Below, piece after piece: positions 8,909 to 50,224 of a stretch of 64,000 bases of DNA (within the stretch, counting starts at the first letter, position 1; each line of letters begins with the position of its first letter). The stretch is from positions 214,989 through 278,988 of IMG/VR virus record IMGVR_UViG_3300047322_001237; one strand, written 5' to 3'. Under the pieces are notes generated by a model. That model was given only the letters and a program-made list of their open reading frames with translations, had not been told where the DNA came from and searched no databases. Made by a program: the position numbers and the translations under genes.

Positions 8909-10111
8909 GTGAATGCAAGCACTCTGCTCGCCAGCGGCCTGCCGCCGGCGCTTGACTACGCCGCGTCCATGGACACATTGGCTGATGTGTCCGCCCGTGC
9001 CTCGGGTGTTCTAAATCAGATCCGCGATCGGATGCTGGAACCATATCCGCGCAAACGCCCGCCCACGTTCACGAGCGCACAGGTGGCCGGCCTGTGCGGA
9101 CTTGAAAAAATGCGTTTCCAGTATCTGACTACGAAAGGCGATCTCCCCACCGGCACGTCGATTAAAAATGGCAAGAGCAAAGTCTTTACGTTGGAAGAGA
9201 CACTACGGTATATCCGGGCTGTCGGCAATCGCCCGCCGCGACCAGAGAACGCTCCCGGCAAAGTTGTGACGGTGGCCAACTTCAAAGGCGGTGTGGCTAA
9301 GACTACGACGGCCGTCTCGCTCGCTCAGGGACTCACCTTACGCGGTCGTAAGGTTCTCGTTATCGACTGTGATCCCCAAGGCACCGCTACGCAGTTATGC
9401 GGCTTCTCGCCCGAAACGGAAATAGGCGAGGAGATGACGCTCATGCCTTTGATCTACGGCGATGAAACGAGACTGGACTACGCAGTCCAACAAACCTACT
9501 GGCAGGACCTAGACCTGGTCCCGGCGTCTTCCGGTCTCTTTAGCGCTGAGTTTCATATTCCGGGCAAGCTGGCCACCGACCACAAGTTCGAATTCTGGAA
9601 CATCTTGAATCAGGGCCTCGAAGGCCTCAAAGACAAATACGACGCCATCGTCATCGACACTCCGCCATCTCTAAGTTATCTGACGATCAATGCGTTGATG
9701 GCGGCGAACGGACTATTGATGCCCTGCCCGCCCGAGGGGCTCGACTTTGCCAGCTCCACTCAGTTCTGGTTCCTCTTCACCGAAATGTCGAGGCACGTTC
9801 CAGCAATGCGTGAGACGAAAGACTTCGATTTCGTCAATGTCGTGCTCACGAAATCGAAGAGTGACGACCTTTCCGGCGTTGTACGGGGCTGGCTGCAAAA
9901 GGCCTACGGAGATCGAGTCCTTCCGTATGAGATTCCCGACTCCGTCGTCCCGAAGAGCGCATCTGCTCAACTCTCTACCGTCTACGACCTTACCAAGCCC
10001 GAGGGCAGCGTGGCAGCCTACACCCGCTTCAAGGATCCGATGGATCAGTTGGTGAGGCACATCGACTCCCAGTTTGTACAGGCTTGGGCGTCTTCCATGT
10101 TGGAGGTCTAA
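8909..10111 (+). CDS. parA: type Ia plasmid partition ATPase
   Basis: N-terminal HTH extension, deviant Walker A KGGVAKTTT, DCDPQG and IDTPPSL. The start may be the ATG at 8969. Confidence 0.95.
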   Translation: MNASTLLASGLPPALDYAASMDTLADVSARASGVLNQIRDRMLEPYPRKRPPTFTSAQVAGLCGLEKMRFQYLTTKGDLPTGTSIKNGKSKVFTLEETLRYIRAVGNRPPRPENAPGKVVTVANFKGGVAKTTTAVSLAQGLTLRGRKVLVIDCDPQGTATQLCGFSPETEIGEEMTLMPLIYGDETRLDYAVQQTYWQDLDLVPASSGLFSAEFHIPGKLATDHKFEFWNILNQGLEGLKDKYDAIVIDTPPSLSYLTINALMAANGLLMPCPPEGLDFASSTQFWFLFTEMSRHVPAMRETKDFDFVNVVLTKSKSDDLSGVVRGWLQKAYGDRVLPYEIPDSVVPKSASAQLSTVYDLTKPEGSVAAYTRFKDPMDQLVRHIDSQFVQAWASSMLEV

Positions 10112-11106
10112 TGCGCGCCGCTCAAAGACTTAGTGAAAAGATTGGTGACATCGACATCCCAGAACCCGGTCAATCGCCGGCGGCCGGTGATCCGTTTCGT
10201 CCAAGGACGGCACCAGGTGGAGCGCTCGCCTTTCAGCATGCAATGCGCGAGAAGCAGGCCGAGCTCGACGCGATGTCCGCACAGCTGGCCGAACTGCAAG
10301 CTCAGAAGCAGACGAACTCGCCCAGCGGCGTCGAGATTCCCCTCGACCAACTGCATGAAGTCGCAGGTCGCAGACGCTACATGCCGCCGGAAAAGTACAA
10401 TGAATTGCGGGAAAACCTGCGGAACAACAAGCTGATTCAGCTGCCCGTCATTCTGCCACGTGCAGAAGGTGGCTTCGAAATACAGTCGGGACATCACCGG
10501 ATCGACGCTTATCGGGAACTCGGGCGTTCGACCATTCGCTGTGTTCTGGGTGACGCGACGGGCGATGAAGCTGACGACGGCGCGTTCTGGGCCAATCTGA
10601 TGCAGTCGGACCTGACTGACTATGAGAAGTACGTTGGACTGACGCGCGTACATTCGAAACATCCGGAATTGGGCCAAGTCGAGCTAGGCGAGCTCGTCGG
10701 CATTAGCACTTCCCACCTCAACGCCCTGCTCTCTTTCGGTCGTTTGCCTGAGCAGGCCCGCGCGATTCTCGATACCAATAAGGCGATCATGGGCGCGAAC
10801 GCGGCCGCGGCTTTTGCGGCTATCGCGGAGGCCGGCAAGGCGGAGCGGGTTGTGGAAGCGGTACGACGTCTCTCCGAGCGGGAGCTAGATCAGGCGCAGG
10901 CGGTGAAGTTTGCAAAAGCCGTTGAGACGCCCAAGGCAACGAAGCCGGCTGCTGAGTCGTACAAGGTGAAGACCGGAAAGAGTACGTGGTGCGATGTGCG
11001 CAAGACGAAAAACATCATGCGCATCGAGTTCCAGTCCGAAGAGGTGGCCAATGCCGTCCAAGAAGCCATCAAGCAAACCCTCGAGGCGCTCGCCGCAAAG
11101 TCCTAA
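10111..11106 (+). CDS. parB: ParB/Spo0J partition protein
   Basis: GHHR (GxxR CTPase motif) and a central HTH. TAATG overlap with the parA stop. Confidence 0.92.
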   Translation: MRAAQRLSEKIGDIDIPEPGQSPAAGDPFRPRTAPGGALAFQHAMREKQAELDAMSAQLAELQAQKQTNSPSGVEIPLDQLHEVAGRRRYMPPEKYNELRENLRNNKLIQLPVILPRAEGGFEIQSGHHRIDAYRELGRSTIRCVLGDATGDEADDGAFWANLMQSDLTDYEKYVGLTRVHSKHPELGQVELGELVGISTSHLNALLSFGRLPEQARAILDTNKAIMGANAAAAFAAIAEAGKAERVVEAVRRLSERELDQAQAVKFAKAVETPKATKPAAESYKVKTGKSTWCDVRKTKNIMRIEFQSEEVANAVQEAIKQTLEALAAKS

Positions 11107-11180
11107 ACGCTAAGTGCTTGATTCTTTTGATTTCCTTAGTACGGAAAAAGGAGACGGCAGTGAAATAGCTGCTAGAAACA

Positions 11181-11298
11181 CGAAGGCCCCCAGCTGGAAA
11201 CTGAGGGCCTTCGCATAAGTGGGCTTGGCTGGAAACCGTCGCTCACTACACTCCCAAGCTGGAAACTTGGAAGGGTACTTCGTCAACCCCGAGTGTAG
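11181..11298 (+). ncRNA. putative structured repA leader / copy-number control RNA
   Basis: Three contiguous hairpins (11181-11213, 11218-11247, 11247-11277), each with a CTGGAAA loop. Alternative pairing of CTACACTC (11246-11253) with GAGTGTAG (11291-11298). Confidence 0.55.
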
Positions 11299-11357: not shown

Positions 11358-12446
11358 ATGTCTATCGCGCAACAGCTCGTTGCTGGCGAGGGTGAAACAC
11401 ACCCCGACGATTCAGCAGCCCTCACCGCTTTCCGGTGTGACTCGACAAACCTGCCTTGGGTCATCTTCCGGGCTGCGTTCCGTGCAGCACACATTGAGGA
11501 GATCCCTCCTCGCGCACGTGCGGTTCTTTCCGCCCTCGCCCGCACCGTCGACGCCGCCAAGCCGTTCGCCGCGATCTTCGCTCGTCGTGAACTGCTCACA
11601 GGACGCGCACTGCAATCCATGCGCACCTTCTACCGCAGCCTCGATGACTTGGAGTCCGCCGGTCTAATCGATCGCCGCGCTCAATCCCGCTACGTTGAAG
11701 CCGGTCTCTTCGGTCGTGCCTACATCCACCTCACCGCGCGAGCAGCCGAGCTTCTAGGGCTCGTTGAGTCGATGCAACCGCCCTCACCTGAGCCCGTCGA
11801 ATCTTCGCTTCCGCATCCGTCTGCCAACTTGGCAGACGGTGGAATATATAAGGATCTAAGCCCTTCTGTTTTTCAAAAGAGACAACCGGGGCAAGTGCCT
11901 GAGGATCTCCAGCGTCTGCGGTCCCTGGGTTTTTTTGATTTCTTGATTTTCAAACTCATGCGGGAAGCGCGTGAGCATGGCAAACGTCTCTCGGATGTCG
12001 TGGAAGCAACATGGGACCACCTGAAGCTCGCCAAAGCCCCAATCAACTACCTGCGGAGTCTGCTGCGGGGAACGGTTGATTTCGCTCACCAACTGCGCGC
12101 CAGGATTAACGTCAAAGCCGAGGAGCAGGCTCGGGTGAAGCGCACCTTGGAAGCCGATCAGGTAGCCCGTCAAAGCGCCGGCAAAACGTTCCTAGACGCC
12201 TCGGGGGCACGCAAGTACGTGATCGATGCCGACGGCGAGAACATGGTCGTCTACAACCGTGACGAAGGCATTGGTCGACAAGCCGCGGGTTGGAAAGAAG
12301 GTTTTGCTGCAGCGCTCGCTCGAGGTCAGATCCGTGCGGCGAGCAGCTACGTGCAGCCGGAGCAGGGCAGGGAACGTCCGCCAGTTACAGCACAGGTTCG
12401 GGAACACATCGCGGGACTGCGCAGCCTGCTGGGAGCTCGTCGCTAG
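11358..12446 (+). CDS. repA: plasmid replication initiator (Burkholderiaceae RepA-type, winged HTH)
   Basis: Directly downstream of parAB. HTH-like segment RTFYRSLDDLESAGLIDRR. Internal AT-rich patches near 11841-11960. Confidence 0.8.
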   Translation: MSIAQQLVAGEGETHPDDSAALTAFRCDSTNLPWVIFRAAFRAAHIEEIPPRARAVLSALARTVDAAKPFAAIFARRELLTGRALQSMRTFYRSLDDLESAGLIDRRAQSRYVEAGLFGRAYIHLTARAAELLGLVESMQPPSPEPVESSLPHPSANLADGGIYKDLSPSVFQKRQPGQVPEDLQRLRSLGFFDFLIFKLMREAREHGKRLSDVVEATWDHLKLAKAPINYLRSLLRGTVDFAHQLRARINVKAEEQARVKRTLEADQVARQSAGKTFLDASGARKYVIDADGENMVVYNRDEGIGRQAAGWKEGFAAALARGQIRAASSYVQPEQGRERPPVTAQVREHIAGLRSLLGARR

Positions 12447-12469: not shown

Positions 12470-12499
12470 AAAAAAAAAAGACGGGTCCGAAGACCCGTC
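12470..12499 (-). terminator. intrinsic terminator with C(UUCG)G loop
   Basis: Minus strand reads GACGGGTC-TTCG-GACCCGTC followed by about ten Ts; it ends the lipoprotein transcript. Confidence 0.9.
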
Positions 12500-15113: not shown

Positions 15114-16643
15114 TTACATTGCATTGGGGATAACGACTGACGAGTACGCCAGTGCGCGAGTTCTAAGCAATTCCTGATTCTTTTGCTGATACGCCATGTG
15201 CTTCTCGACGTCGGCGCAGTAAAAGGAAATGCATTCAGGCGTCTTTCCCGTCTTCAGCTTTCGAGTCCGGCCAAACATCTGCAGGATCTGCTGCTGACTG
15301 GAGATCGCCACGGACATGATGTTCGTGGTGAGGTTCGGGATGTCGACCGCGGTGCCTGCCGAGATCGGTGTCGTGACGCGGATGTCCGCTTCGATACAGT
15401 TCTCGAACGGGTCCTCTTCCACGTAACGACGCACGTCCAGGTTCGGATACTGCTTCTGCAGGAACTCCGTCACGAGCGTGCAGAATTCGATCGACGCGCA
15501 GAAAATGATCGCCTTCTCAGTCGGCTGATACGTCCTCAGGTACTTCGCCTTAAGCACCTGGTCAATCAGGTTGAGGTAGTTCTTCAGGACAGGCGGGTTC
15601 TTCATCAGGTACTTCTCGAACACATGGTTCGAGTAGTTACCTTGCATGTCCTTGGTGCGGATGGCGTCAGGCCGCGCAATGCGGTAGAACAGGGCGGTCG
15701 CATTGGTGTAGCGGTCGTATGCCGGACCCTTATGGCGGTCAGGGGACGGATACGCGATCTCATACATCCGCTGGATGAACGCATCTTCCTTGTCGAGCGT
15801 TGCGGACAACGACAGCGACTTATGGCAGTGCGTGTAGAGATCCACCAGGAAGTTCAGGTGAAAATCCTGGTGCACTTCGTCGATGAGGCGGAACCCCGAT
15901 CGCAGCGTTTGCATCAACTCCGATGGACGACATGCATAGCCCATCTCAAGCGTCTGGTCGCCGTACTCCTTGTAGAGTTTGAACCAGTTCTGGATCGTCT
16001 TGTTACTGATCAGGACGATCTTGCTCGTAAGCCGACCTTCGAGCGCCATCTCCAGAAGCGCCATCAGATGATCGCTTCCGCGGATGATCATCAGGTCTTC
16101 AATCGCGATGTCGAACACTTCGCGGATTTCGTCACGCCACTTCTCCAGATACATCGGCTTCACGATGATCACCGGAGCAAGGCGCGTCTTCGCCACAGCA
16201 AAGAGCGACGTTACGCCTTTACCTTTACCCGTCTGAAACTCGATCAGCTTCGAGACCGAACCGTCCTCCTTGAGGACGTAGTCGACGCCTTCATCCTGAT
16301 AGTCGTGCAGGTTCCAGCTGTCGAAGATCTTGAAGTCAACTTCTCGAACCGGCGGCAACTCGACCTGCTCGATGTCGACGAGCGAATCCTTCAGGTTGTG
16401 AAACGCGAGGTATTCCTTGAATTTCTTCAGGACGTTGATGTGATAGCGATACTCACCAGTGTCAGCACAATGCGTCGCATAGACCGGAGGCTTCGGAGGC
16501 GGCTTTGTCGAATAAGGACTCGGCTTGGCGCGAAGGGGCTGCACGAACTGCTTGGTGAATCCGAGCACCGCGGGCATGGCGCGCGGCGTCACCTTGCTGA
16601 CGACGAAGTGATGCGAATGAAGACGAATCAGAAGTTCAGCCAT
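15114..16643 (-). CDS. SF2 (UvsW-like) helicase, phiKZ gp75-like
   Basis: Walker A QTGKGKG, DEVH box, SAT motif III and QMFGRTRK motif VI. Follows the beta' gene as in phiKZ. Confidence 0.9.
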   Translation of the reverse strand: MAELLIRLHSHHFVVSKVTPRAMPAVLGFTKQFVQPLRAKPSPYSTKPPPKPPVYATHCADTGEYRYHINVLKKFKEYLAFHNLKDSLVDIEQVELPPVREVDFKIFDSWNLHDYQDEGVDYVLKEDGSVSKLIEFQTGKGKGVTSLFAVAKTRLAPVIIVKPMYLEKWRDEIREVFDIAIEDLMIIRGSDHLMALLEMALEGRLTSKIVLISNKTIQNWFKLYKEYGDQTLEMGYACRPSELMQTLRSGFRLIDEVHQDFHLNFLVDLYTHCHKSLSLSATLDKEDAFIQRMYEIAYPSPDRHKGPAYDRYTNATALFYRIARPDAIRTKDMQGNYSNHVFEKYLMKNPPVLKNYLNLIDQVLKAKYLRTYQPTEKAIIFCASIEFCTLVTEFLQKQYPNLDVRRYVEEDPFENCIEADIRVTTPISAGTAVDIPNLTTNIMSVAISSQQQILQMFGRTRKLKTGKTPECISFYCADVEKHMAYQQKNQELLRTRALAYSSVVIPNAM

Positions 16644-16709: not shown

Positions 16710-18701
16710 TTATGCGCCGTTACGTTCCAGATGCTCGAAGACCTCGCGCGGACAGAGCGCGACGTCAAACGGGTGATCCATCCGGTTGGTACTGATGAAG
16801 CTGATCGGGTCGGTGATGGCTTCGCGGTGATCCTCGAAAGCCATCGTCGCGGAAAGCGAACGCGACAACATCGAAAGCGACATCACACCGAGACCTTCAT
16901 CGGTCCAAGGCTTCGGCAAGCTGTAGTCGCCGTCCTCCGCCGAAACAATCATCGCTTCGTAGAGAACGACATCAAGCACTGTGAGGTTCACGTCAAGCTT
17001 GCTGTTGACCAGGTCGTACAGTTCGATCAGGGCGTCATCCGGCCTGACGTTCTTGTCCCGGTCTTGCATCATCTTGACGCTCGACTCCAACATCTTCGCG
17101 ATGTCACGCGAATGGTCCGACATGTTGAAGTGCTTGAGGGGAAGCGCCAGAATCGGCAGCGACCAGTCCCAATCCCTCATATCGATGACGTAATTCCCGG
17201 TTTCCGTATCGAGATCCCAGCCGACGCGCCGAATGTGATGCAAGAGCGAATGCGTCATCGAAGCTTTCCGACCGCTCACCGCCGTCAGGATGTCGACGCC
17301 TTCCGCCTTCCCGTATTCGCCGACCAACAGCCCCACGTACTCGAGCTCCGAGAAGCGCGCGATGTTGAGATTGTCGGGATCGTCGATCTCGTTCACGTCG
17401 TTCAAATTCGGTGCAGACTCCGCCGCGATCACCAGCTTCACCGGCAAGTCCTTCAACCGATCCGCCATGAGATACGAGTTGTCGTCCGACCCCACCTTCA
17501 GGTACAGCTTGTCCGCATCCCGCAAGACGATGGCCTCGATCGATGCCGAGCTGTCCAAGTGCTTAACCGACAGCACGGACTGCGACGACTTCTCGGTCAG
17601 CAACATGCAACACATGTGACCGATGTTCGTGAAATCCGGCACCGAGTTGGCGAGTTCGCCGAAGCACGTCGAGCACACGCCGACAGGATCGGGATGTGCG
17701 CATCGCATGACCGAGCGAACCCGAACCGTCTTACCGACCAGATGCTCGTCCCCCTTGCGGAGGATCTTGAGCTTGTTCTCCTTTTCGTCCAGATAGAACT
17801 TGCCGGCGAGACGCCCCAGGTCCTTCTTGCGCATCGGCCACTTCACGTACTTGGTCGTACCGCAATCCCCCTTATGCAGGTTCTGCACGTTCATGGACAT
17901 GAGCTGCAGACGACGCGAGAAGTACTCGGCCTGCTGCAACGGCGCCTTCGAGAAGATCAGCGATTTCGCGGCCGAACGGGATTCGACCAGCGAGTCGCGG
18001 AAGTTCCGATAGCCTTCGGTATAGCTGCGCAGAATCGGCAGCTCGAAGACGTTCGAGTCGATCTCGGTGACGCGACCGCGAGCGGACACGCACTGGAGCA
18101 ACTGATCGAACTTCACCGTACCCGCACGCGCGGCAAGCGCGAGCGGATTCTTCTTCAGATCGACGCCGCCCTTGATCACTGCGCCGACGGCCTGATAGCT
18201 GTCCTCGAGCATCTTGTCCGTGACCTTCTCCAAGGGCACCGAGAACAACGGCTTCTTCGCCTCAATGATCTTCGGATGGTCGAGCATCTCGATGAAGTCA
18301 GTGATGTCGAGCGACACCACGTATTCTTCGAGTCGGTACGAGAGCTCGTTGTACATCTCGTTCGTGATCTCGTACGTGCGCTTGGCCAGTCGGTCGAGCG
18401 TGACTGCCGGATCGCCGTGATAGGCGTCAAACGTATCCCACACCACGCTGGCGAGCAGATCCAGGTGCGTGTTGGAGCCGAGGCGCTTGTCACCCAGCAC
18501 CGAGAGAACGTGATGCTTCTTCAACACCGGCGTCTGGGGAAACTCGCGGTGGAACTGCCAAACGTATGAGCTGTAGATGGTCGAGCGGAAGTCGACCTCC
18601 ATTTCCCCGTCGTCGAACACACAGATGAACGACCCCCAGAGCGAATTCCACAGATCCTCTGTGCTCATTCCGATGAGAGTGCGCGCGCTGATGCGTCTCA
18701 T
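16710..18701 (-). CDS. non-virion RNA polymerase beta' C-terminal subunit (phiKZ gp74-like)
   Basis: Bridge-helix-like AEYFSRRLQL, DCGT, Zn-binding C..CSTCFG and NIGH; position next to the beta subunit. Confidence 0.88.
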   Translation of the reverse strand: MRRISARTLIGMSTEDLWNSLWGSFICVFDDGEMEVDFRSTIYSSYVWQFHREFPQTPVLKKHHVLSVLGDKRLGSNTHLDLLASVVWDTFDAYHGDPAVTLDRLAKRTYEITNEMYNELSYRLEEYVVSLDITDFIEMLDHPKIIEAKKPLFSVPLEKVTDKMLEDSYQAVGAVIKGGVDLKKNPLALAARAGTVKFDQLLQCVSARGRVTEIDSNVFELPILRSYTEGYRNFRDSLVESRSAAKSLIFSKAPLQQAEYFSRRLQLMSMNVQNLHKGDCGTTKYVKWPMRKKDLGRLAGKFYLDEKENKLKILRKGDEHLVGKTVRVRSVMRCAHPDPVGVCSTCFGELANSVPDFTNIGHMCCMLLTEKSSQSVLSVKHLDSSASIEAIVLRDADKLYLKVGSDDNSYLMADRLKDLPVKLVIAAESAPNLNDVNEIDDPDNLNIARFSELEYVGLLVGEYGKAEGVDILTAVSGRKASMTHSLLHHIRRVGWDLDTETGNYVIDMRDWDWSLPILALPLKHFNMSDHSRDIAKMLESSVKMMQDRDKNVRPDDALIELYDLVNSKLDVNLTVLDVVLYEAMIVSAEDGDYSLPKPWTDEGLGVMSLSMLSRSLSATMAFEDHREAITDPISFISTNRMDHPFDVALCPREVFEHLERNGA

Positions 18702-18752
18702 TTGTTTTCCTTGTTAAGCGGCCCGGCCGATGAGCTGGCCGGGCGGTCGTCT

Positions 18753-21002
18753 TCAATGAGTGAGTGCTGCTTGCTGTTTTGCCAGGTTGCCGCTACGGCC
18801 TTTCCAAGACGGCGAGTAGGGTCGATAGACGAACTGGACGCCAGCGCACGCGAGGATGTGCTTGACCAACTGCAACGGACGCGAGTTGCCGTACGGGATG
18901 ACCGAACGATCAACGGCGTTGTGGATATTGGTCGGCTCGTCTGCATCGAGAATCGCGTTACAGACCATCTCGTGCGTTTGCGGATTGTTGTTGCGATCCA
19001 TGACCTCGGCCGATGCCCGCGGTCCAACGTACGATGCCAAGATCCGCTTTTCCGCCTCGCCCCATGCACGAATCGACTGTGCACGGTAGGGCAGGGCGTA
19101 CTTGTCGGCGTTGGTCACCTGAGACAGGACACCGTAGTGCTGAACCTTGCCCGACGACACGGCCGTCCAGTCGTCCGCGATCTTTTCCAGCAGGATGATG
19201 TACACGCTGCCAATCCGCACCGGGACCTTGGTCGTCACGCGTCGACCAGAGTTGCCGACGTAAGTCACGGGACCGTACGTCGACGGATAGTTGGCTTCGA
19301 GCATCCGAACGATGTCACTCGACTCGCGCGGGTTGTTCGTCGGCAGATGCAGATAGATGCCGTTGCGAATCACCTGAGCCAGGTGTTCCGCACGCGTCTT
19401 CAGATACGCACCACCTTCAAACCACGAGTGCATGACAGGTGCCACGATTTCGTAGTAACCCATCAGGTAGTTCCACGCGTGATCGAACACCGGCTTGTTG
19501 CTCGCCTCGAGTTCCTGCGCCTTCGCCAATGCCTGACGATCGTTCTCCGCGATGCCGAACCATGCACGAATCTGCTTGGCCACGTCACGCGAATGTGCGT
19601 TGATGTAGATCTCGTACTTGCGGCCGAGATTCATCCGCGACACCGTCGAGTTCGGGTCCATCACGATGTCTGCACGATTGCCATCCGCGTCGACCGGCAT
19701 GTGATCCGCGGGCACGACGTTACAGATCACGCCCTTACCACCGTGCGTGTCGGTCAGCTTGAAGCCGATCGTCGGCGTGACGTCGTACTCGATCGTGAAC
19801 TCGATGCGCCAGTCATCCAGCGGAGCCTTGCGATACAGCTTGTAGATGCGCTCCTTGGATTCCTGGACCACGGACAGGGCTTCGACCACGAGACGATGGA
19901 ACTCCGGCGTCAGACGCAGGGACTCCTTGCGCTCGCGCTCAAGGCGTCGCCATTCGTAAACGATGTCCGAGTAAAACTGACGACGCGCCCGATCGTAACG
20001 ATCAGCCTGAGCATCCATGCCGATCGGCGTCGGCGAGTTGTTCGCCTGCGTATCGTGATGAACACGGATGTCGATCACCCGGCCGCCTGCACCGTCTGCG
20101 TAGATCATCTTGTCAAAAACGTGATCGATCTCCATCAGGTCGTACGTGCCTTGCTCGACGATCGCCAACTCGCGGTCGTAGCTTTTCGGATCCTTGTCGT
20201 GCGGACGCAGTGCCATCAGCACGCCGTCTTCACGAACGAATTCACCGATGTCCGGGAACGCCTTGAAGTTGTCCTCGTCACCGTACAGATTCAGCGGGTA
20301 GGCCTTGGCGCCAAATTCGACGACACGCGTCTCGTACTTCTTGAAGCCGAATTCTTTGAGCACCTCCGCGCTGATCATGATGCCGTCCTCAGAGGTGGCC
20401 GGATGACTCATGTACGCGATGTTGCATTCACGCCCGTACTTGTAGCCGCCCGTATCCGTCACAGAGGGAGAATCCGTGAGGATCGTGTCCGCCTTCAGAT
20501 AGCTGCCCACGCGGATGTCGGAAAGCGAAGGCTTGATCGCGTTCCGGAACCCGAAGTAGCTGTGATACGACGTGTGCGTCGTGATGTTGATGCAGCCGAT
20601 CTCCTTCGTGTGCACGTTCTCGTAAATGAGCACGCTGTGCGGGTTGTCCTGGCGGCGCTTGAGCACCGTGTCCTGTCCGAACGTTTCGCGATAGCGGTCG
20701 ATCACCTTGATCACTTCGCAGTCGACCGGCACCTTCGTCGAGAAGGTGTACTTGCCGAATTCACGTTCCGTGCCGCTCTGGCAGCGGCGCTCGGTCGAGC
20801 CCTTGATCACGAGACATTGACCGACGTGCGACGAAAACATCTGTTTGCGGGCAGCCGAGTTATGGCCGTCCCACGGGTTCAACCCGCAAACGTTCATGAG
20901 CTCCGGGTCCAGCTCATTCGGTTCTTCCAGCAGAACACCCGAGCGACGAATCGCGGATGTCATGGGCTTGATGCTCGCAGTCAGACTGGCGGTGTCCATC
21001 AT
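18753..21002 (-). CDS. non-virion RNA polymerase beta subunit (phiKZ gp71-73-like)
   Basis: RpoB-like motifs SEDGIMIS, GFKLTDTHGGKGVI and DIVMDPNSTVSRMNLG. Confidence 0.92.
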   Translation of the reverse strand: MMDTASLTASIKPMTSAIRRSGVLLEEPNELDPELMNVCGLNPWDGHNSAARKQMFSSHVGQCLVIKGSTERRCQSGTEREFGKYTFSTKVPVDCEVIKVIDRYRETFGQDTVLKRRQDNPHSVLIYENVHTKEIGCINITTHTSYHSYFGFRNAIKPSLSDIRVGSYLKADTILTDSPSVTDTGGYKYGRECNIAYMSHPATSEDGIMISAEVLKEFGFKKYETRVVEFGAKAYPLNLYGDEDNFKAFPDIGEFVREDGVLMALRPHDKDPKSYDRELAIVEQGTYDLMEIDHVFDKMIYADGAGGRVIDIRVHHDTQANNSPTPIGMDAQADRYDRARRQFYSDIVYEWRRLERERKESLRLTPEFHRLVVEALSVVQESKERIYKLYRKAPLDDWRIEFTIEYDVTPTIGFKLTDTHGGKGVICNVVPADHMPVDADGNRADIVMDPNSTVSRMNLGRKYEIYINAHSRDVAKQIRAWFGIAENDRQALAKAQELEASNKPVFDHAWNYLMGYYEIVAPVMHSWFEGGAYLKTRAEHLAQVIRNGIYLHLPTNNPRESSDIVRMLEANYPSTYGPVTYVGNSGRRVTTKVPVRIGSVYIILLEKIADDWTAVSSGKVQHYGVLSQVTNADKYALPYRAQSIRAWGEAEKRILASYVGPRASAEVMDRNNNPQTHEMVCNAILDADEPTNIHNAVDRSVIPYGNSRPLQLVKHILACAGVQFVYRPYSPSWKGRSGNLAKQQAALTH

Positions 21003-31556: not shown

Positions 31557-33086
31557 TTAATGAATAGCCGGAACCGGTTCCGCAGCCGGCGGCGCTTCGG
31601 GAATCGCTGCCATGCGACGCAGAACTTCCGGATCGGCTTGTTCCGGTTCGTCCCAGTGAATCCAGTTGCTGATCGTCGCGATCACGGTCTTGGGCATCGA
31701 CAGATTGCGCGACACGGTACGCGGTGCGTTCATGTCGAACACGCTCTGATGCGGTGCCAGTCGATACAGCTCTTCGGCCGTCACGAAGTCGAGCGACAAC
31801 GTTGCGTTGAGCTGGTCGCCGTCGAAGTCCGCGTTGAAGCCGACCACCGACAGAATGCTCATCGAGATCGTCGGGATCGCCGGTTCGCTCTTCACCTTCG
31901 TGATGAACATGGCCTGCGCCGATGAACGCGCCAGCGACGGATTGCGTTGCAGCACGATCGGGACGCCCTTGTACGGGGAACGCTCGATGAAGTCGTGGAA
32001 CATCTGGTCGAGCATCGGACAGTACTTCGCCGCGTGGTCGAGCAGGTACGCATCCGCTTCCGACGGCGTCATGCCTTGACGCATCATGCGGTTCTTCAGA
32101 TGCAACTCGAACACGGCAATGCCGATGCCCCACGGGATGTGAACTTCGTCGTAGTCGTGGCGATCCGTGAGCGAACTGATCACCGCACGGAAGCTGAAAT
32201 GTGCCCGCGTACCATAGACGTGCTTGCGGAAGATGCCTTCCTTCTTCGCCAGCACCGTGCGCATCGTCTCGTCGTAATACTGCGACGTCTGGATGATCAT
32301 CTTGATCGTGCGGTTCTCTTTCACTCGTTCGGAGTGGACGGAGAGCGGCGCGTCAATGCCGACCATCATCAGAATCGCGTCCACAGCAACAGGAGCGGTC
32401 GCGTCCGTGTACGAGCCGTGATTCGTGTCTTCCAACACGAGCAGTGAACGGTTCGGCAGCGGCAGGTATTTCGAGAAGACGCAATCGCGCTGTTCTTGCA
32501 GCAGCTGCTTGAGCGGAGCGAGCTTCTTCTTGCTGTAGAACTTCAGATTGAACATGAAGTCCATGATCTGATCGAAGTTCTCGACGAAGTTGTTGTAGCC
32601 GCGCGGGATGTTCGCCTTGCGGATGTAGTCCATCACAGGCGGCTCTTTCACGGTCGCCTTGTAATTGACGTCGACGATCCAGCGCATCACGTCGAAGTTG
32701 CTCTTCTCGAAGCGCTCCGCGATCATCGTCCAGACCGTCGGATTGATCAGGGCCGTGACACCCTTCGGTGCGCGCAGCCAAATCAGCGGTTCGAGATCGC
32801 GCTGATGCGGTGCCGTCACTTCGGTGTGGCAGTCCGGGCATTCCACGGCCTTGATGTACTTCCCGTCACCGAGCTTATCGACGCCGACCGTGTTGCCGCA
32901 GTCACACGAGGGGATGTTCGAGAGCAGATCCGAGTTGATCAGATCGTACTTCGTGAAAATCAGGTTGTAGATGTGTTCTTTTTCCTCTTCGGAAGTATCC
33001 GAGAGGTCGTTGATGATGATCGGTTCCTTGGACGAGAAGTGATTGAACACTTCGTCTTGGTTCACGAGTTGGAGGAATACGCCCAC
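31557..33086 (-). CDS. non-virion RNA polymerase beta' N-terminal/catalytic subunit (phiKZ gp55-like)
   Basis: Catalytic NADFDGD motif, Zn-finger CDCG...CPDC and QRNPSL; immediately downstream of chimallin. Confidence 0.95.
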   Translation of the reverse strand: MGVFLQLVNQDEVFNHFSSKEPIIINDLSDTSEEEKEHIYNLIFTKYDLINSDLLSNIPSCDCGNTVGVDKLGDGKYIKAVECPDCHTEVTAPHQRDLEPLIWLRAPKGVTALINPTVWTMIAERFEKSNFDVMRWIVDVNYKATVKEPPVMDYIRKANIPRGYNNFVENFDQIMDFMFNLKFYSKKKLAPLKQLLQEQRDCVFSKYLPLPNRSLLVLEDTNHGSYTDATAPVAVDAILMMVGIDAPLSVHSERVKENRTIKMIIQTSQYYDETMRTVLAKKEGIFRKHVYGTRAHFSFRAVISSLTDRHDYDEVHIPWGIGIAVFELHLKNRMMRQGMTPSEADAYLLDHAAKYCPMLDQMFHDFIERSPYKGVPIVLQRNPSLARSSAQAMFITKVKSEPAIPTISMSILSVVGFNADFDGDQLNATLSLDFVTAEELYRLAPHQSVFDMNAPRTVSRNLSMPKTVIATISNWIHWDEPEQADPEVLRRMAAIPEAPPAAEPVPAIH

Positions 33087-40354: not shown

Positions 40355-42523
40355 TTAGGCGGCTTCCGGCTGTTTCACTGGTGCAGCCATGTGGTCACTG
40401 ACCAGGCGCGTCATCTGTTTGTTTTGCATATAGATCCCGAGCGATTCAAGTATGATGTAAAACACAGTCACGGTATCCGTGATGAGCTTACGGATCGCGA
40501 TCTCGCTTTTGATCTCCTTCGGGATGCCCTTCGACTGGATGATCTGCTCAGGCACGTGGAAGGTGCTGATCGCCTTCTTTCCGCTCTTGGCCAGCCAGTT
40601 CTCCAGCTTCGCCGCCAAATCACGGTCTTCCATCTTGGCGAGCCACGCCTTGATCTTCACCGGGGACTTGAGGTCCACGGAGATCTTCACCGAGTTGTAC
40701 GGCGGCTCCTGCACTTCGCCGTACTTCGTGCCGAACGTTGCATTCCAGAAGGTGTAGTGCGCAAAATTGCTTTGCTCGGGAGGGAGCGTGTACGAAGCCG
40801 CAGGTTTAATCTGACCCATGCGGAAGTATTCGTAGCTCGAACGCTCCATAATCGAGTCACGGATGTCGTGCTCCAAACCCGCGATCTCGCCCATGATGTC
40901 CTTCAGCTTCACGGGCTCTTCGCGCATCACTGTGTCCATGATCCGGATCATCATCTCTTTCGCCTTCTTCATCACCGCAGGCGGTGCGTTTGACGACTTC
41001 AAGTGCACGCCCTTGATCTCCGGCTCCTGTGCCTTGTAGAGGTTGCCTTCCTGACAACCGATCGAGGCGTAGTAGTGCTTGGCCACCTGCGTGGGAACGA
41101 ACACGTCGAACTTGTACTCGTTCTTCATCGCCACCTGGAAGATGCGGCTTTCCTCGATGCCGAAGTTGGCGGACATACGCGCGAGCACGTGCGTGATGGT
41201 CTGCGCAGCCAAAAAGATCATCGTGGCGGCCACACCCGACGAGCGGTCGTCGTAACCGAGGCGGCCGTCGTTGTACCAGACCACCCAGTCCTGGACTGTA
41301 AAGATGGTCGAGTCTGTATCTCCCATCAACGCCGAGCGGCGGATGCTGTCCGGGAAGTGCGCGAGGGAGGCCGGGACGTTCTTCGTCACCCAGAACGCCT
41401 TGATCAGGTTCTTGTACTCGGTGATGACCTGACCGATGTGCGCAACAGTCGATGCGAGGATGCCGTACGCGTCGGAACCGACCACGTCCTTCACCTTCTT
41501 GCCCTTCATCTCTTTCGGACAGAGTTGCGAGGCGAGGGCGATGTGATCCTCGTGCGCGTTCTTGATGATACTGTCCGGATCCGGATGTACCTCACCGACG
41601 CGGGACGACAGCTCATGCACAAACCGGTAGACGATCTCCCGGTTGAACTTCATCAGGTGGTACAGATCGCCCGTGTAGACGAATGCGCTGCGCTGGATGT
41701 CGGTGAGCTTGCTGACATACTGCTCGATCAGGCGATGCGCTGCTTCGTCACGGAAGTAGAGCTGGGTGGAGTAACGAATGCACTCCATCGTCTCTTCGAC
41801 GCTCGGATGACGAATCCCGAACTCGTTCATCGCCAGCTGGATCGACTCGTAGTCCGTGTTGGTGACGATCGAGACGATGTTGTTCTTGACGATGTCCGGC
41901 GACCAGTAATGACGGTTGCCGTTCAGAAACTTCTCGTTGTTGGCAGAGCCATAGCCCGCCGTCGACCGGCAGTTCGAGGTCAGGGTCGAGTGTGCAGTCT
42001 TGTTGAACAGTGGCGTCGACGCACTGACGTGAGCACCCGAACACGCGTTGTTCGAGAGCTTCATGTTCGTCTGCTCATTGTCTTTCAGAATCTCGAGGAT
42101 CTTGTTGCCGTCCATGCGAGCCTGGAACATGGCCTTCTTCGCCACGCCGCGACGCTTCACGTTCGCGTCAATGAACCCTGCCAGCAACGACTTCTTCACC
42201 GTCGGGTGATAGTAGGTCGTGAGGGTCGGAGCAATGAGCTGATGCTCTTTGATCGACTCCGAAAGGTAAGCGCCGAGCGTGCCTTCCACCTGCTCGCGAT
42301 CGCCGTGCTCGTTGCGACGCAGGAACATCACCGCCGGATCCTTGAACGCGAACTTGCCGTCCGGGCGCAAGTTGTTTTTCACGAACGCCAAACACTGCTC
42401 GCGCGGTGCACCGGTCATTGTGGAGAGGTACTCGACGCTCTGATCGATGTAATGCTTGAAGACATCCAGATCGCGCCTGTACTCGTTGGCGGGCAGGACG
42501 AAGGGATTGTCGAACGTGGACAT
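40355..42523 (-). CDS. family B DNA polymerase, catalytic subunit (phiKZ gp50-like)
   Basis: KLSNNACSG (motif B-like), MGDTDS (motif C) and EIKGVHL; 722 aa with no exonuclease domain, as in split phiKZ-type polymerases. Confidence 0.9.
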   Translation of the reverse strand: MSTFDNPFVLPANEYRRDLDVFKHYIDQSVEYLSTMTGAPREQCLAFVKNNLRPDGKFAFKDPAVMFLRRNEHGDREQVEGTLGAYLSESIKEHQLIAPTLTTYYHPTVKKSLLAGFIDANVKRRGVAKKAMFQARMDGNKILEILKDNEQTNMKLSNNACSGAHVSASTPLFNKTAHSTLTSNCRSTAGYGSANNEKFLNGNRHYWSPDIVKNNIVSIVTNTDYESIQLAMNEFGIRHPSVEETMECIRYSTQLYFRDEAAHRLIEQYVSKLTDIQRSAFVYTGDLYHLMKFNREIVYRFVHELSSRVGEVHPDPDSIIKNAHEDHIALASQLCPKEMKGKKVKDVVGSDAYGILASTVAHIGQVITEYKNLIKAFWVTKNVPASLAHFPDSIRRSALMGDTDSTIFTVQDWVVWYNDGRLGYDDRSSGVAATMIFLAAQTITHVLARMSANFGIEESRIFQVAMKNEYKFDVFVPTQVAKHYYASIGCQEGNLYKAQEPEIKGVHLKSSNAPPAVMKKAKEMMIRIMDTVMREEPVKLKDIMGEIAGLEHDIRDSIMERSSYEYFRMGQIKPAASYTLPPEQSNFAHYTFWNATFGTKYGEVQEPPYNSVKISVDLKSPVKIKAWLAKMEDRDLAAKLENWLAKSGKKAISTFHVPEQIIQSKGIPKEIKSEIAIRKLITDTVTVFYIILESLGIYMQNKQMTRLVSDHMAAPVKQPEAA

Positions 42524-48332: not shown

Positions 48333-48587
48333 TCAGATCGTGACCGTGGCGTTGGTCGCGACGTAGTCGACGATGTTCTGGATGGTCTTGAAGGCCTCCG
48401 CTTCCTCGTCGAGGATCTCGATACAGAATTCGTCTTCGATGGCCATTACCATCTCGACTTCATCGAGGGAGTCAGCGCCGAGGACTTCGACAATCGTGTC
48501 TTCGTTCTTGATGTCCTTGACCGGCACCTGAAGCTGAGCCGACACGATGGCTTTGACACGTTCTTCAATCTGCTGTTTATCGCTCAT
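48333..48587 (-). CDS. acpP: acyl carrier protein
   Basis: LGADSLD phosphopantetheine site; closely follows the AcpP pattern (ERVKAIV..QL...EDEF.IEI.DEEAE...TIQ..VDY). GGAG RBS. Confidence 0.92.
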
Positions 48588-49225
48588 GCTTGCTCCGTAG
48601 ATGTGGTGAACGACTGAGGATTTTCACCTCCGGCCCTTTTCCAGACTGCTGCTATGCCCAAACCGGTGAGGCGTGCTCGTCTAGCCCGGTACCGCGCGTA
48701 CCGGCTCGTGGTCGTTCGTAACTGTTGATGTTGGTTTGGAATACGCTCAAAACGAACGCATTCCAAACCCGCCGTACTCGGCGTGTTGGGATCGCCCCGT
48801 CCTCCGCGTTAGCGGATCCTGCGGGAACGACCGGTTGGTTCTCACTGAACCTCGATCGATGCGACAGTGCCTTGGACCTCATTCGGAACGCGCACCCCTT
48901 GATCACAGGGGAATGGGCGAACTCAAGTCTCGTGTCAGCTCACTTCGCGATGACCAGCTTCCTTATAAAGAAGCTCTTTGTTGTTCGATGTCAGGTGAGA
49001 AATCTGGCAGGCGGACTCGTCATGTCCCTGGGCAATCCCGCCAGAGCGTGGGGTCCATACGACCTCCTTTTGATCGCGGTATCCGGCTCTTTAGGGCGTG
49101 CAGTTAGCTTGGGGACGAACGCGCGCATGTGCACGTCATGCGCCGTCTTTGACGAGTATCCGAGATTGCGAAGGATCCAATGCGCAGGCGTGAACCAGAG
49201 CACGCGAACCAGATCCCGCCACCAG

Positions 49226-50224
49226 TTACAACACCAGGCCGGTATCGGTAGCCTGATCAGCACTGCTGGAGATGCCTCCCTTGCGCAGACGGGCAGCCGT
49301 CTGCTCGTTCATGTCGTCCAGCACTCGGTGCAGGTCGGCGGCGACGTCGGCGAATACGCCGTCCGACGTCACGAAGTGACACGGCGCCTCGAGGTCGAGT
49401 TGGTCGGAAGCACCGTCGAGGTAGCCGACGTATTGCACTTCCGGACGCAGCGACAGGTTCGGATCGACACCAGTGGTCGTAAGCGTCGCGATGCTGATGA
49501 GGTTGCCGATCTTGCCGAGATTCGTCGCGTTCAGATCTTCGATGAGCGTAAGTGCGGTGAGCATCGGCTTGTAGGATGTGACCTTCTGGTAATGCAGCCA
49601 GTGGTACAGATCCTTCGAGTCGAGCTCACGGTTGCGACGCGAGAACAGCAGGCAGAGGGCCGCGACGATATGCTGAATGCGCTTATCGACGACCGAGCGC
49701 GTCATTTCCGCGCTGTTCTGCAGGTACGTCACGACTACCGGCTCCTGACGCACCGACGCGATCTGATCGTACGACTTGAGCGTGTTCAGCGTGTTTTCGG
49801 TGTACTTCTTCGTGCTGTCGTCGCCGACGCAGATGACGACGGTCGGATAGTCCTTTGCGAGGAGTTCCGAGACGATCGACGGCGCGATCACAGAACCGGA
49901 ACCGCCACCGCCCGACGACAGGACGATGTTCAGGTCGACCGGCTTGAAGGTCTGCAGGATGTCGCGCACGCGCTCGCTGATGGCGCCGTGATTTTCGCGG
50001 CGCACTTGACCCGAGCCGTCGAGGCCGTCAATCAGATAGACGCTTTCCGCCTTGATGTCCGAATGAAGGTTCGACTTCGACGTGTCGATGTACACGACGT
50101 CCAGTTGCGCGAACGTTTCATCGCTGCTTTTCGCGACGTCCTCGACCTTGTGGCCCATGTTAATGCCAGCGCCGCCGCACGCGTAGAGTCGCACGCGACC
50201 GCGTTCACGTTCATGCGTAGTCAT
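49226..50224 (-). CDS. phuZ: phage tubulin PhuZ
   Basis: CGGAGIN, IDTS, tubulin signature GGGGSGS and a short acidic C-tail (DQATDTGLVL). About 332 aa; ATG at 50224 after AAGGA. Confidence 0.93.
   Translation of the reverse strand: MTTHERERGRVRLYACGGAGINMGHKVEDVAKSSDETFAQLDVVYIDTSKSNLHSDIKAESVYLIDGLDGSGQVRRENHGAISERVRDILQTFKPVDLNIVLSSGGGGSGSVIAPSIVSELLAKDYPTVVICVGDDSTKKYTENTLNTLKSYDQIASVRQEPVVVTYLQNSAEMTRSVVDKRIQHIVAALCLLFSRRNRELDSKDLYHWLHYQKVTSYKPMLTALTLIEDLNATNLGKIGNLISIATLTTTGVDPNLSLRPEVQYVGYLDGASDQLDLEAPCHFVTSDGVFADVAADLHRVLDDMNEQTAARLRKGGISSSADQATDTGLVL

What the first reader, a model, noticed from the sequence alone, without database searches (positions are those of the whole stretch)
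8909..50224. Two parallel replication/segregation systems on one genome (RepA+ParAB versus PolB+PhuZ)
Seen: ParA/ParB/RepA plus a phage PolB, helicase and PhuZ. Established: PhuZ positions the phage nucleus during lytic growth, while type Ia ParAB segregates plasmids on the host nucleoid. Inference: a life-cycle switch from ParAB-tethered naked DNA to shell-enclosed, PhuZ-positioned DNA. ParB spreading might also need to be removed, or might help seed the nucleus.
Basis: inference. Interest (0 to 1): 0.65.

Follow-up and report, generated by a model that had tools for sequence, protein, structure and literature searches.

The report
Nucleus-forming jumbo phage with plasmid replicon
A complete 279-kb "phage-nucleus" jumbo phage of soil Caballeronia/Paraburkholderia carries an intact, host-type plasmid replication and partition cassette that is conserved in a whole clade of such phages, several found inside pure bacterial cultures, which suggests that this supposedly strictly lytic phage family has members that can also live as plasmids.

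Summary
Observation confirmed. The window is the last 64 kb of a complete 278,988-bp Chimalliviridae-type genome from a rhizosphere metagenome. It encodes chimallin, PhuZ, a divergent PolB, a helicase and split RNA polymerases. It also carries a ~12-kb island with type Ia ParA, ParB and a Burkholderiaceae plasmid initiator. That initiator is named "Replication protein O" and is not a RepA family member.

The island is not a chimera or one-off. It sits at the same locus in seven distinct related phages, which form one clade in an RNAP tree (SH-aLRT 100). Four come from isolate assemblies: Caballeronia arationis LMG 29324, Paraburkholderia BCC1886 and HC6.4b, and an IMG isolate. The nearest cultured relative, FLC9, lacks it.

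ParA and ParB are under strong purifying selection (dN/dS 0.05-0.08). Their alleles are shuffled against the core phylogeny, as plasmid incompatibility determinants are. Conserved cis elements are a sigma70-type parA promoter with an operator palindrome, three iterons, an AT-rich intragenic ori-like segment, and a LexA box before a solo imuA. The genome has no integrase.

Best reading (about 0.6): a phage-plasmid lineage within nucleus-forming phages. No expression or copy-number data exist, so the switch itself is inferred. I found no prior report. Novelty: a new variant of a known kind.

The parts
4174..4500 (+). H-NS-like nucleoid protein gene in the island. It is conserved in the BCC1886 phage (49%).
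   Evidence: PF00816 1e-13 and PF22470 4e-5. The BCC1886 homolog lies in the same order.
7035..7676 (+). Short ATP-dependent DNA ligase (adenylation domain), an island gene.
   Evidence: PF01068 3e-30, phrog_114 5e-27. Conserved in L004 (74%) and BCC1886 (54%).
7679..8392 (-). Solo imuA-like gene (SOS translesion-associated ImuA family), divergent from parA.
   Evidence: NF033429 8e-64, 215 bits against a cut-off of 150. Start ATG at 8392-8390. Conserved in L004 (79%) and BCC1886 (62%).
8405..8424 (-). LexA (SOS) box TACTGTACATCTATACAGT, about 13 nt upstream of the imuA ATG.
   Evidence: It is the only CTGT-N8-ACAG in the window and one of two in the 279-kb genome. The box is kept at the same distance from imuA in L004, BCC1886, and C. 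arationis C145 and C413, although the intergenic region is only 49% identical.
8611..8704 (.). Inverted half-sites CGTGAAACA (8614) and TGTTTCACG (8691), which are halves of the canonical parS palindrome. Candidate centromere or regulatory sites.
   Evidence: Conserved in the window, L042, L043, L004, C145 and C413. Their function is not established.
8793..8821 (+). Sigma70-type parA promoter: -35 TTGCTC, a 17-nt spacer, -10 TAGAGT.
   Evidence: Read from the sequence. Both hexamers align across five loci with different par alleles.
8847..8886 (.). Operator-like palindrome ATTCTTCGGT..TTTTTCGAAAAA..ACCGAAGAAT between the promoter and the parA RBS. Probable ParA/ParB autoregulation site.
   Evidence: Conserved in L042/L043, which share the same ParAB allele group.
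8909..10111 (+). Type Ia ParA partition ATPase.
   Evidence: It is 67% identical to ParA at position ~1 of Caballeronia megaplasmids/chromids. dN/dS is 0.045-0.049 against L042/L043.
10111..11106 (+). ParB centromere-binding protein, translationally coupled to parA.
   Evidence: dN/dS 0.076.
11185..11275 (+). Three iteron-like direct repeats GCTGGAAAC (11193, 11228, 11258) upstream of rep.
   Evidence: The nt conservation peak is 0.84-0.91 over 11 loci. There is a depth peak in four metagenomes.
11358..12446 (+). Plasmid replication initiator of the Burkholderiaceae 'Replication protein O' family (no Pfam).
   Evidence: 488+ homologs, mostly on Caballeronia/Paraburkholderia plasmids. dN/dS 0.14-0.25.
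11818..11982 (.). Hyper-conserved AT-rich segment inside rep: an 11-bp inverted repeat, then an AT-rich stretch, then TTGATTT repeats. Candidate intragenic origin.
   Evidence: 100% identity stretches against plasmid pBTHE68_p2, compared with ~80% in flanking coding sequence. Conservation is 0.88-0.94 after a 0.60 linker. AT is 56% against 40% for the gene. Depth peaks in X1-X4.
12480..12499 (.). GC hairpin with A/T runs on both sides: a bidirectional intrinsic terminator closing the rep unit.
15114..16643 (-). Phage helicase, the backbone gene bordering the island.
   Evidence: phrog_16 7e-30. 41% identical to FLC9 and 84% to L004.
16710..21002 (-). Two phage multisubunit RNA polymerase beta-type subunit genes (16710-18701 and 18753-21002).
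   Evidence: phrog_3015 3e-188, phrog_3295 1e-228, PF00562.
31557..33086 (-). Phage RNA polymerase beta-prime-type subunit.
   Evidence: phrog_2987 3e-145, PF00623.
33525..35492 (-). Chimallin (phage nuclear shell protein).
   Evidence: PF25677 3e-48, phrog_4795 6e-100. 44% identical to FLC9.
40355..42523 (-). Divergent family B DNA polymerase (lytic replicase). An AT-rich TTTTTTATT motif lies 47 nt upstream.
   Evidence: PF20286 1e-245. Motif.
49226..50224 (-). PhuZ phage tubulin. The same AT-rich motif lies 63 nt upstream.
   Evidence: phrog_4733 2e-92, Tubulin + TubZ_C_2, PDB 3zbp 3e-27.

Best explanation
The window belongs to a complete chimallivirus (nucleus-forming jumbo phage) of Caballeronia/Paraburkholderia that is most likely also a plasmid: a phage-plasmid.

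Shown: between conserved backbone blocks the phage carries a host-type maintenance island. The island holds a LexA-box-controlled imuA, a sigma70-promoter parA-parB operon (type Ia), an iteron-preceded rep with an AT-rich ori-like segment inside the gene, an H-NS-like gene and a ligase.

Inferred mechanism:
- Carrier state: the circularised 279-kb genome lies unshielded in the cytoplasm. Rep and the host replisome replicate it at low copy, and ParA/ParB segregate it on the nucleoid.
- Silence of the lytic genes: they have their own phage-type intergenic motifs and are presumably read only by phage RNA polymerases, so they would stay silent by default.
- Trigger: a host signal, with the SOS response the best candidate because of the conserved LexA box, would start the lytic programme.
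- Lytic state: phage RNAPs and PolB then work inside a chimallin shell that PhuZ filaments position.
For: 1. The backbone is chimalliviral and complete: chimallin, PhuZ, divergent PolB, split RNAPs and TerL are present. The contig has 127-bp identical ends and CheckV rates it 100% complete.
2. The cassette is a real plasmid replicon. ParA is 67% identical to Caballeronia megaplasmid ParA. The parA-parB-rep order matches plasmid pBTHE68_p2. Rep is 82-84% nt identical to plasmid rep genes. Iterons and an intragenic AT-rich block are conserved above the level of the coding sequence.
3. The cassette sits at the same locus in seven distinct related phages, which form one clade (SH-aLRT 100). FLC9 and 30+ other chimallivirus loci lack it.
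4. Selection is purifying: dN/dS is 0.05 for ParA, 0.08 for ParB and 0.14-0.25 for Rep, at dS of about 1.
5. Par alleles are decoupled from the core phylogeny. Phages with 95-97% identical RNAP carry 45% identical ParA, while phages with 63% identical RNAP carry 90% identical ParA. This is expected for incompatibility determinants in use.
6. Four members are contigs in axenic isolate assemblies, including a type strain. The BCC1886 contig (286 kb) also has identical ends.
7. The genome has no integrase, serine recombinase or S24 repressor.
8. A host-type promoter and a LexA box are conserved while the surrounding intergenic DNA is only 49% identical.
9. Independent contigs of the source run join the island to the backbone.
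Against: There is no expression, copy-number or induction data; only metagenome contigs were available. Chimalliviruses without any par genes also occur in isolate assemblies as persistent infections (preprint 10.1101/2024.12.31.630880), so presence in isolates alone is not proof. No conserved CI-like repressor was found; the only HTH_3 protein (52064-52696) is unique to this genome. No unambiguous parS was found. No chimallin-encoding record exists among 72,556 PLSDB plasmids. How a phage that injects its own RNAP and builds an early vesicle would abort that programme to establish a plasmid state is unknown. The Rep fold could not be verified (AF2 pLDDT 58.8).
Confidence: 0.6

Rival explanations
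1. Carrier-state helper. The phage is not a silent prophage. It maintains a chronic or persistent (pseudolysogenic) infection, and Rep and ParAB merely help stalled or slowly replicating genomes be inherited by daughter cells while some lytic genes stay active.
For: Chimalliviruses lacking par genes are already known to persist in isolate cultures. No conserved repressor or immunity gene was found in the clade.
Against: A complete low-copy replicon with an autoregulatory operator, iterons and allele shuffling is the signature of regulated plasmid maintenance. Host-factor-dependent cis sites (sigma70, LexA) need naked DNA, not shell-enclosed DNA.
Confidence: 0.15
2. Selfish passenger. The imuA-parAB-rep unit is a mobile mini-replicon of Caballeronia plasmids that rides in a hypervariable phage locus in order to be transduced, with no role in the phage's own life cycle.
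For: C. arationis holds at least four such modules on separate small contigs. The locus carries unrelated cargo in other phages (L014 sulfotransferase). Island genes have a lower codon-usage score and lower GC3 than backbone genes.
Against: The position, gene order and neighbours (H-NS, ligase, imuA) are conserved over deep divergence of the phage, down to 46-64% core identity, in a single clade. There are no transposase or recombinase genes and no flanking repeats.
Confidence: 0.12
3. Lytic-cycle or warfare function. ParAB/Rep act during infection, for example by interfering with resident plasmids or chromids through incompatibility, by titrating host ParA/DnaA, or by organising phage DNA before or inside the nucleus.
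For: ParA is 65-67% identical to the host chromid ParA, so cross-talk is conceivable. The half-sites resemble chromosomal parS.
Against: The promoter is host-type and has no phage motif. The genome-wide phage intergenic motif flanks the island but is absent from it. An iteron replicon with autoregulation is unnecessary for interference.
Confidence: 0.1
4. Assembly chimera of a plasmid and a phage in a metagenome.
For: The source is a metagenome, and Logan contigs break inside rep, where related replicons share sequence.
Against: The same junctions occur in six other assemblies, including isolates. Logan contigs of 43 kb and 12.8 kb bridge the island to the backbone on both sides at uniform depth 15.
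Confidence: 0.01

Closest known systems
Phage-plasmid P1 (and P7)
   Same: It has type Ia ParA/ParB, an iteron-type plasmid initiator and a separate lytic replication system on one phage genome, with no integration. It is a LexA-linked, low-copy plasmid prophage (own knowledge; P1, N15 and SSU5 are named as phage-plasmids in PMC7969092).
   Different: P1 is about 94 kb and uses host RNAP and a C1 repressor. It has no nuclear shell, no tubulin and no phage RNAP. Here the lytic machinery is chimalliviral, and no C1/CI-like repressor was found.
Phage-plasmids N15 / phiKO2
   Same: Their SopA-like ParA proteins are the best phage matches to the window's ParA (31-33% identity). They are extrachromosomal prophages.
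   Different: They are linear plasmids with telomeres, 46-52 kb, lambdoid. They are not related in backbone.
Clostridium phage c-st and Bacillus pBtoxis TubZRC systems; jumbo plasmid-prophage pBtic235
   Same: In c-st and pBtoxis a tubulin relative (TubZ) acts on a plasmid or prophage (own knowledge). pBtic235 is a circular jumbo prophage kept as a plasmid (PMC9700832).
   Different: There the tubulin itself is the partition motor. Here PhuZ belongs to the lytic nucleus-positioning family, and partition is by a separate ParABS. pBtic235 is not a chimallivirus.
Burkholderia phage FLC9 and other Chimalliviridae (phiKZ, 201phi2-1, Goslar)
   Same: The backbone is collinear with FLC9 (141 of 289 genes shared). 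Chimallin is 44% identical, PolB 58% and PhuZ 42%.
   Different: FLC9 has about 3 kb of small genes where this phage has the 12-kb plasmid island. FLC9 has no ParA, Rep, imuA or LexA box.
'Persistent virulent' Goslar-like and Seoul-like chimalliviruses in Escherichia isolates (bioRxiv 10.1101/2024.12.31.630880)
   Same: They are chimallin-encoding jumbo phage genomes found in bacterial isolate assemblies.
   Different: Those genomes were screened and found to lack ParA and plasmid Rep. The present clade has a full replicon.
parA-parB-rep replicons of Caballeronia/Burkholderia plasmids (e.g. pBTHE68_p2)
   Same: They share the gene order, iterons and intragenic conserved block. Rep is 64% aa / 82% nt identical.
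   Different: Those replicons sit in conjugative plasmids (MOBF, MPF_T), without imuA or phage genes.

Membership tests
Chimalliviridae (nucleus-forming jumbo phages) | Chimallin shell protein | tested here: met
   PF25677 3e-48; phrog_4795 6e-100
Chimalliviridae (nucleus-forming jumbo phages) | Split multisubunit phage RNA polymerases and a divergent PolB | tested here: met
   phrog_3015, 3295, 2987; PF20286 1e-245
Chimalliviridae (nucleus-forming jumbo phages) | Genome over 200 kb, collinear with a cultured member | tested here: met
   278,988 bp with a 127-bp end overlap; synteny with FLC9
Chimalliviridae (nucleus-forming jumbo phages) | Actual formation of a shell-enclosed replication compartment | not testable with these tools
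   Needs microscopy.
PhuZ phage tubulin | Tubulin/FtsZ GTPase domain plus the phage-tubulin C-terminal domain, with similarity to solved PhuZ | tested here: met
   PF00091 4e-8, PF22334 1e-5 (just under its cut-off), phrog_4733 2e-92, 3zbp 3e-27 over residues 10-331
Type Ia ParABS partition system | Deviant Walker A ParA with a roughly 100-aa N-terminal regulatory extension | tested here: met
   KGGVAKT at residues 126-132; the ATPase domain starts at 118; SopA/RepA-type NCBIfam hits
Type Ia ParABS partition system | ParB with ParB_N and HTH, encoded directly after parA | tested here: met
   ParB_N is weak (5e-4) but phrog_4715 gives 1e-14 and TIGR00180 gives 8e-10; 1-nt overlap with parA
Type Ia ParABS partition system | Identified parS centromere | tested here: inconclusive
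   No repeated palindrome was found. Candidates are the half-sites at 8614/8691 and the palindrome at 8847-8886.
Iteron-type plasmid initiators (RepA/Rep_3, lambda O) | Sequence membership in a curated Rep family | tested here: not met
   No Pfam, NCBIfam or PHROG hit at E<=0.01, and no PDB hit. 'Replication protein O' is only a source name.
Iteron-type plasmid initiators (RepA/Rep_3, lambda O) | Iterons next to the gene, an AT-rich unwinding region, and a position after parAB in bona fide plasmids | tested here: met
   3x GCTGGAAAC; an AT-rich conserved block at 11818-11982; the same layout in pBTHE68_p2
Iteron-type plasmid initiators (RepA/Rep_3, lambda O) | Winged-helix fold | tested here: inconclusive
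   The AF2 model has mean pLDDT 58.8 and pTM 0.40. It was not searched.
Phage-plasmids | A complete phage gene set plus plasmid replication and partition genes on one replicon, with no integrase | tested here: met
   CheckV 100%
Phage-plasmids | Stable extrachromosomal carriage in host cells | tested here: inconclusive
   Relatives are contigs in four isolate assemblies, and one is circular by end overlap. No copy-number or passage data exist.
Phage-plasmids | Lysogeny repressor or immunity system | tested here: not met
   No S24 peptidase. The single HTH_3 protein is not conserved in the clade.
LexA (SOS) regulon | CTGT-N8-ACAG box overlapping the promoter or 5' UTR of the gene | tested here: met
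   The box lies 13 nt from the imuA ATG and is conserved in five loci. LexA binding itself was not tested.

The most novel reading that the evidence does not exclude
A clade of nucleus-forming jumbo phages is temperate without integration and without a classical repressor. The genome alternates between two physical and transcriptional regimes. In the first it is naked, nucleoid-tethered plasmid DNA read only by host factors: a sigma70 parAB promoter, LexA, an H-NS-like silencer, and Rep with the host replisome. In the second it is shell-enclosed DNA read only by phage RNA polymerases and copied by phage PolB. Lytic genes are silent by default in the plasmid state because no phage RNAP is present. 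SOS derepression of the island is the trigger that restarts the phage programme.
Probability: 0.3. Interest if true: 0.9.

Novelty: new variant of a known kind. Interest (0 to 1): 0.8.

Why it matters
Chimalliviridae are treated as obligately lytic. Two recent reviews of jumbo and nucleus-forming phages do not discuss lysogeny, temperate growth or phage-plasmids at all. That assumption underlies their use in therapy and biocontrol.

A clade that can be inherited as a plasmid would change that picture. It would explain jumbo-phage genomes found in pure cultures.

It would also pose a sharp mechanistic question. The phage injects its own RNA polymerase and hides its DNA from the first minute, so how does it instead expose that DNA to the host replication, partition and SOS machinery? 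And how does the genome move from nucleoid tethering to a tubulin-positioned protein shell?

The host strains (C. arationis LMG 29324, Paraburkholderia HC6.4b and BCC1886) exist in collections, so the question is directly testable.

Tried and rejected
- Megablast of 22 kb against phages gave no match. tblastn of Rep against phages gave none.
- I looked for parS as a repeated perfect palindrome of 12-20 nt across the genome. There was none near par. parS remains unassigned.
- The AlphaFold2 model of Rep from an 8-sequence alignment was poor (pLDDT 58.8), so I ran no fold search. A profile search against PDB gave nothing.
- A sigma70 consensus scan of the island was not enriched over shuffles (5 against 4.5). 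The parA promoter was found only through cross-locus conservation.
- There is no integrase, resolvase or S24 peptidase, no dif-like site within 9 mismatches, and no tRNA or Rfam family in the window.
- tblastn of chimallin against PLSDB plasmids gave no match, so no deposited 'plasmid' record is a chimallivirus.
- I considered the HTH_3 protein at 52064-52696 as the lysogeny repressor. I rejected it as a clade-wide regulator because it is absent from BCC1886 and FLC9.
- Absence of the phage intergenic motif from the island is not statistically meaningful on its own. The density is about 1 per 7 kb and the island is 10.6 kb.
- The look-up of sequencing runs returned only metagenome contig sets and no RNA, so expression and copy number could not be addressed.
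- The assembly-chimera explanation was rejected.

Full report
**What the window is.**
The 64-kb window is the last part of a single 278,988-bp contig whose first and last 127 bases are identical. IMG/VR classes the contig as having direct terminal repeats, and CheckV rates it 100% complete. It is therefore a complete genome that assembled as a circle.

It comes from a rhizosphere metagenome. Near-identical short contigs occur in other rhizosphere and root metagenomes. GC is 57-58%.

Gene calling by codon usage and family scans give a typical Chimalliviridae backbone:
- chimallin, 33525-35492(-): PF25677 3e-48, phrog_4795 6e-100
- PhuZ, 49226-50224(-): phrog_4733 2e-92, with a full-length match to the solved phiKZ PhuZ 3zbp
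- divergent family B DNA polymerase, 40355-42523(-): PF20286 1e-245
- three split RNA polymerase subunit genes
- a helicase, an SbcD-like nuclease, and the large terminase

The closest cultured phage is Burkholderia phage FLC9. Chimallin is 44% identical, and 141 of my 289 predicted genes are shared.

**The observation.**
- ParA (8909-10111) has a deviant Walker A (KGGVAKT) after a ~117-aa N-terminal extension. It hits SopA/RepA-type partition models, so it is type Ia.
- ParB (10111-11106) overlaps the parA stop by one base.
- A 362-aa protein (11358-12446) has no Pfam, PHROG, NCBIfam or PDB match.

The DNA of this third gene and its upstream spacer is 82-84% identical to Caballeronia/Burkholderia plasmid genes annotated 'Replication protein O'. 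In plasmid pBTHE68_p2 that gene follows parA-parB exactly as here. The family has at least 488 members, nearly all from Caballeronia, Paraburkholderia, Burkholderia and Cupriavidus. ParA is 67% identical to the ParA at coordinate ~1 of Caballeronia megaplasmids/chromids.

**Anatomy of the island.**
Synteny with FLC9 shows a collinear backbone. Window 3017-14940 (about 12 kb) replaces about 3 kb of unrelated small genes in FLC9. The island holds:
- a DarG-like macrodomain (3355-3801)
- an H-NS-like gene (4174-4500)
- a short ATP-dependent ligase (7035-7676)
- a solo imuA (7679-8392, minus strand; NF033429 8e-64)
- parA, parB and rep

**Conserved non-coding elements.**
- A near-consensus LexA box (TACTGTACATCTATACAGT) lies 13 nt before the imuA ATG. 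It is one of only two CTGT-N8-ACAG sites in the 279-kb genome. It is retained at the same distance from imuA in five loci whose intergenic DNA is otherwise 49% identical.
- A sigma70-type promoter (TTGCTC, 17 nt, TAGAGT) precedes parA. It is followed by a 40-bp palindrome just before the parA ribosome-binding site.
- Inverted half-sites CGTGAAACA and TGTTTCACG are present.
- Three GCTGGAAAC iterons precede rep.
- A 165-nt segment inside rep (11818-11982) is AT-enriched: 56% AT in its 11840-11960 core, against 40% for the gene. It is more conserved at the nucleotide level (0.88-0.94 over 11 loci) than the coding sequence around it. This is the pattern of an intragenic origin, as in lambda O. 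That reading is inference.
- In four metagenomes, contig depth peaks exactly at the iterons and at this segment. This fits cis elements shared by many replicons in the community.

**Not a one-off.**
Searches seeded with the helicase, the RNAP subunit, ParA and Rep found the same parA-parB-rep cassette next to the helicase in six further genomes:
- a metagenomic contig (L004)
- Paraburkholderia sp. BCC1886 (a 286,074-bp contig with ~125-bp identical ends)
- Paraburkholderia sp. HC6.4b (282,688 bp; L042 = L062)
- an IMG isolate genome (L043)
- a 275,198-bp metagenome contig (L063)
- Caballeronia arationis LMG 29324. Its 143,740-bp phage contig breaks inside the island. Contig C145 of the same assembly carries the matching imuA-parAB-rep piece.

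All of them encode chimallin.

In a quick maximum-likelihood tree of the RNAP subunit, these phages form one clade with SH-aLRT 100. FLC9, L014 and about 30 other chimallivirus loci fall outside and have no ParA within 10 kb. L014 carries a sulfotransferase and other cargo at the same locus. BCC1886 shares the whole island order: H-NS-like, ligase, imuA, parA, parB, rep.

**Signs of function.**
dN/dS is 0.045-0.049 for ParA, 0.076 for ParB and 0.14-0.25 for Rep, at dS of about 1.

Par alleles do not follow the phage tree:
- The window and L004 have 95-97% identical RNAP but only 45% identical ParA.
- The window and HC6.4b have 63% identical RNAP but 90% identical ParA.
- ParA and ParB can also be uncoupled from each other.

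C. arationis holds at least four such modules of different allele groups. This is what incompatibility-driven diversification of working centromere systems looks like.

The genome has no integrase, serine recombinase or S24-type repressor.

**Mechanism proposed.**
Shown: a complete plasmid-type replicon with host-type control sites sits inside a complete chimallivirus. It is conserved and under selection, and members occur in axenic cultures.

Inferred: these phages can persist as low-copy circular plasmids, replicated by Rep with the host replisome and segregated by ParABS.

A sigma70 promoter and a LexA operator can only work on DNA that host proteins can reach, so they imply a state in which the genome is not enclosed. 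Backbone genes instead carry phage-specific intergenic motifs:
- an AT-rich TTTTTTATT motif lies 22-86 nt before starts, including those of PolB and PhuZ
- a motif of the form CTGGGCnCTTATGCCGTC occurs about 40 times. Two copies flank the island and none lie inside it.

In the absence of phage RNA polymerase the lytic programme would be silent by default. The conserved SOS box suggests DNA damage as the trigger.

**Rivals.**
- A helper for persistent, non-silent infection (0.15). It is supported by the preprint showing that par-less chimalliviruses persist in isolates, and by the lack of a conserved repressor.
- A selfish mini-replicon passenger (0.12).
- A lytic-cycle or anti-plasmid role (0.10).
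- An assembly chimera (about 0.01, refuted).

**Comparison with the known, and novelty.**
Functionally this is the P1/N15 logic: a plasmid replicon and partition system plus a separate lytic replicon, with no integration. The ParA is distantly related to N15 and phiKO2 SopA.

The backbone differs. It is a nucleus-forming jumbo phage with its own RNAPs, a shell and a tubulin.

Full-text searches found no paper that combines chimallin or Chimalliviridae with phage-plasmid, temperate or lysogenic carriage. The one exception is the preprint, which explicitly excluded phage-plasmids. Two recent reviews do not discuss lysogeny. The library lacks most subscription journals, so prior description cannot be excluded.

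I rate it a new variant of a known kind, with interest 0.8 and confidence 0.6 in the phage-plasmid reading.

Read laying was given 6,000 bases. No alternative genetic code was used. No step needed referral.

Noticed in passing
window 3355-3801 (+): A stand-alone DarG-like macrodomain (PADLOC DarG 8e-47; Pfam Macro 5e-12). It is probably a counter-defence against DarT DNA ADP-ribosylation.
   Followed up: partly
genome-wide; window 3850(+), 14460(-), 21542, 33451, 47563, 55919, 57718: An intergenic motif of about 18 nt, CTGGGCnCTTATGCCGTC, often follows a GC hairpin. It occurs about 40 times in the 279-kb genome, almost always between genes. Two copies flank the plasmid island. It may be a phage promoter, terminator or processing site.
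   Followed up: partly
window 27125, 42570, 50287 (-), 53934 (+): An AT-rich motif TTTTTTATT lies 22-86 nt upstream of gene starts (11 of 12 genome-wide copies), including PolB and PhuZ. It is a candidate phage-RNAP promoter class.
   Followed up: partly
window 51406-53645 (-): A three-gene block holds the only HTH_3 protein of the genome (52064-52696, with the HTH at the C-terminus). The HTH protein and its neighbour 51406-52053 are absent from both BCC1886 and FLC9. The 303-aa neighbour 52734-53645 is shared with BCC1886 (37%). Function unknown.
   Followed up: partly
window 58873-61119 (-): The large terminase gene is inverted relative to its neighbours when compared with FLC9. The PHROG match comes in two stretches.
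   Followed up: no
G001 (C. arationis LMG 29324) contigs C145, C323, C413, C445: One bacterial genome holds at least four imuA-parA-parB-rep modules of different allele groups. Two of them (C145, C445) are next to homologs of phage-island genes. Whether these are plasmids or further phage-plasmids is open.
   Followed up: partly
L062 1-7500 (Paraburkholderia sp. HC6.4b); L063 2911-3774: In sister phages the island carries other plasmid-type cargo. HC6.4b has a PIN-domain toxin with a small upstream gene (VapBC-like), a TIR_2 protein, and a LexA box next to a CPPA-family gene. The metagenomic relative has a KfrA_N protein.
   Followed up: no
window 35493-36681, 42524-43587, 47364-48332: These are stretches of about 1 kb with no convincing ORF in my gene calling, and no tRNA or Rfam match.
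   Followed up: partly
L014 13324-14520: A related chimallivirus carries a TPR-sulfotransferase at the locus where this clade carries the plasmid island.
   Followed up: no
window 6729-7676 (+): The ligase has only the adenylation domain (213 aa) and is preceded by a conserved 99-aa ORF 6 nt upstream. It may be a two-part ligase. Both parts are conserved in L004 and BCC1886.
   Followed up: no
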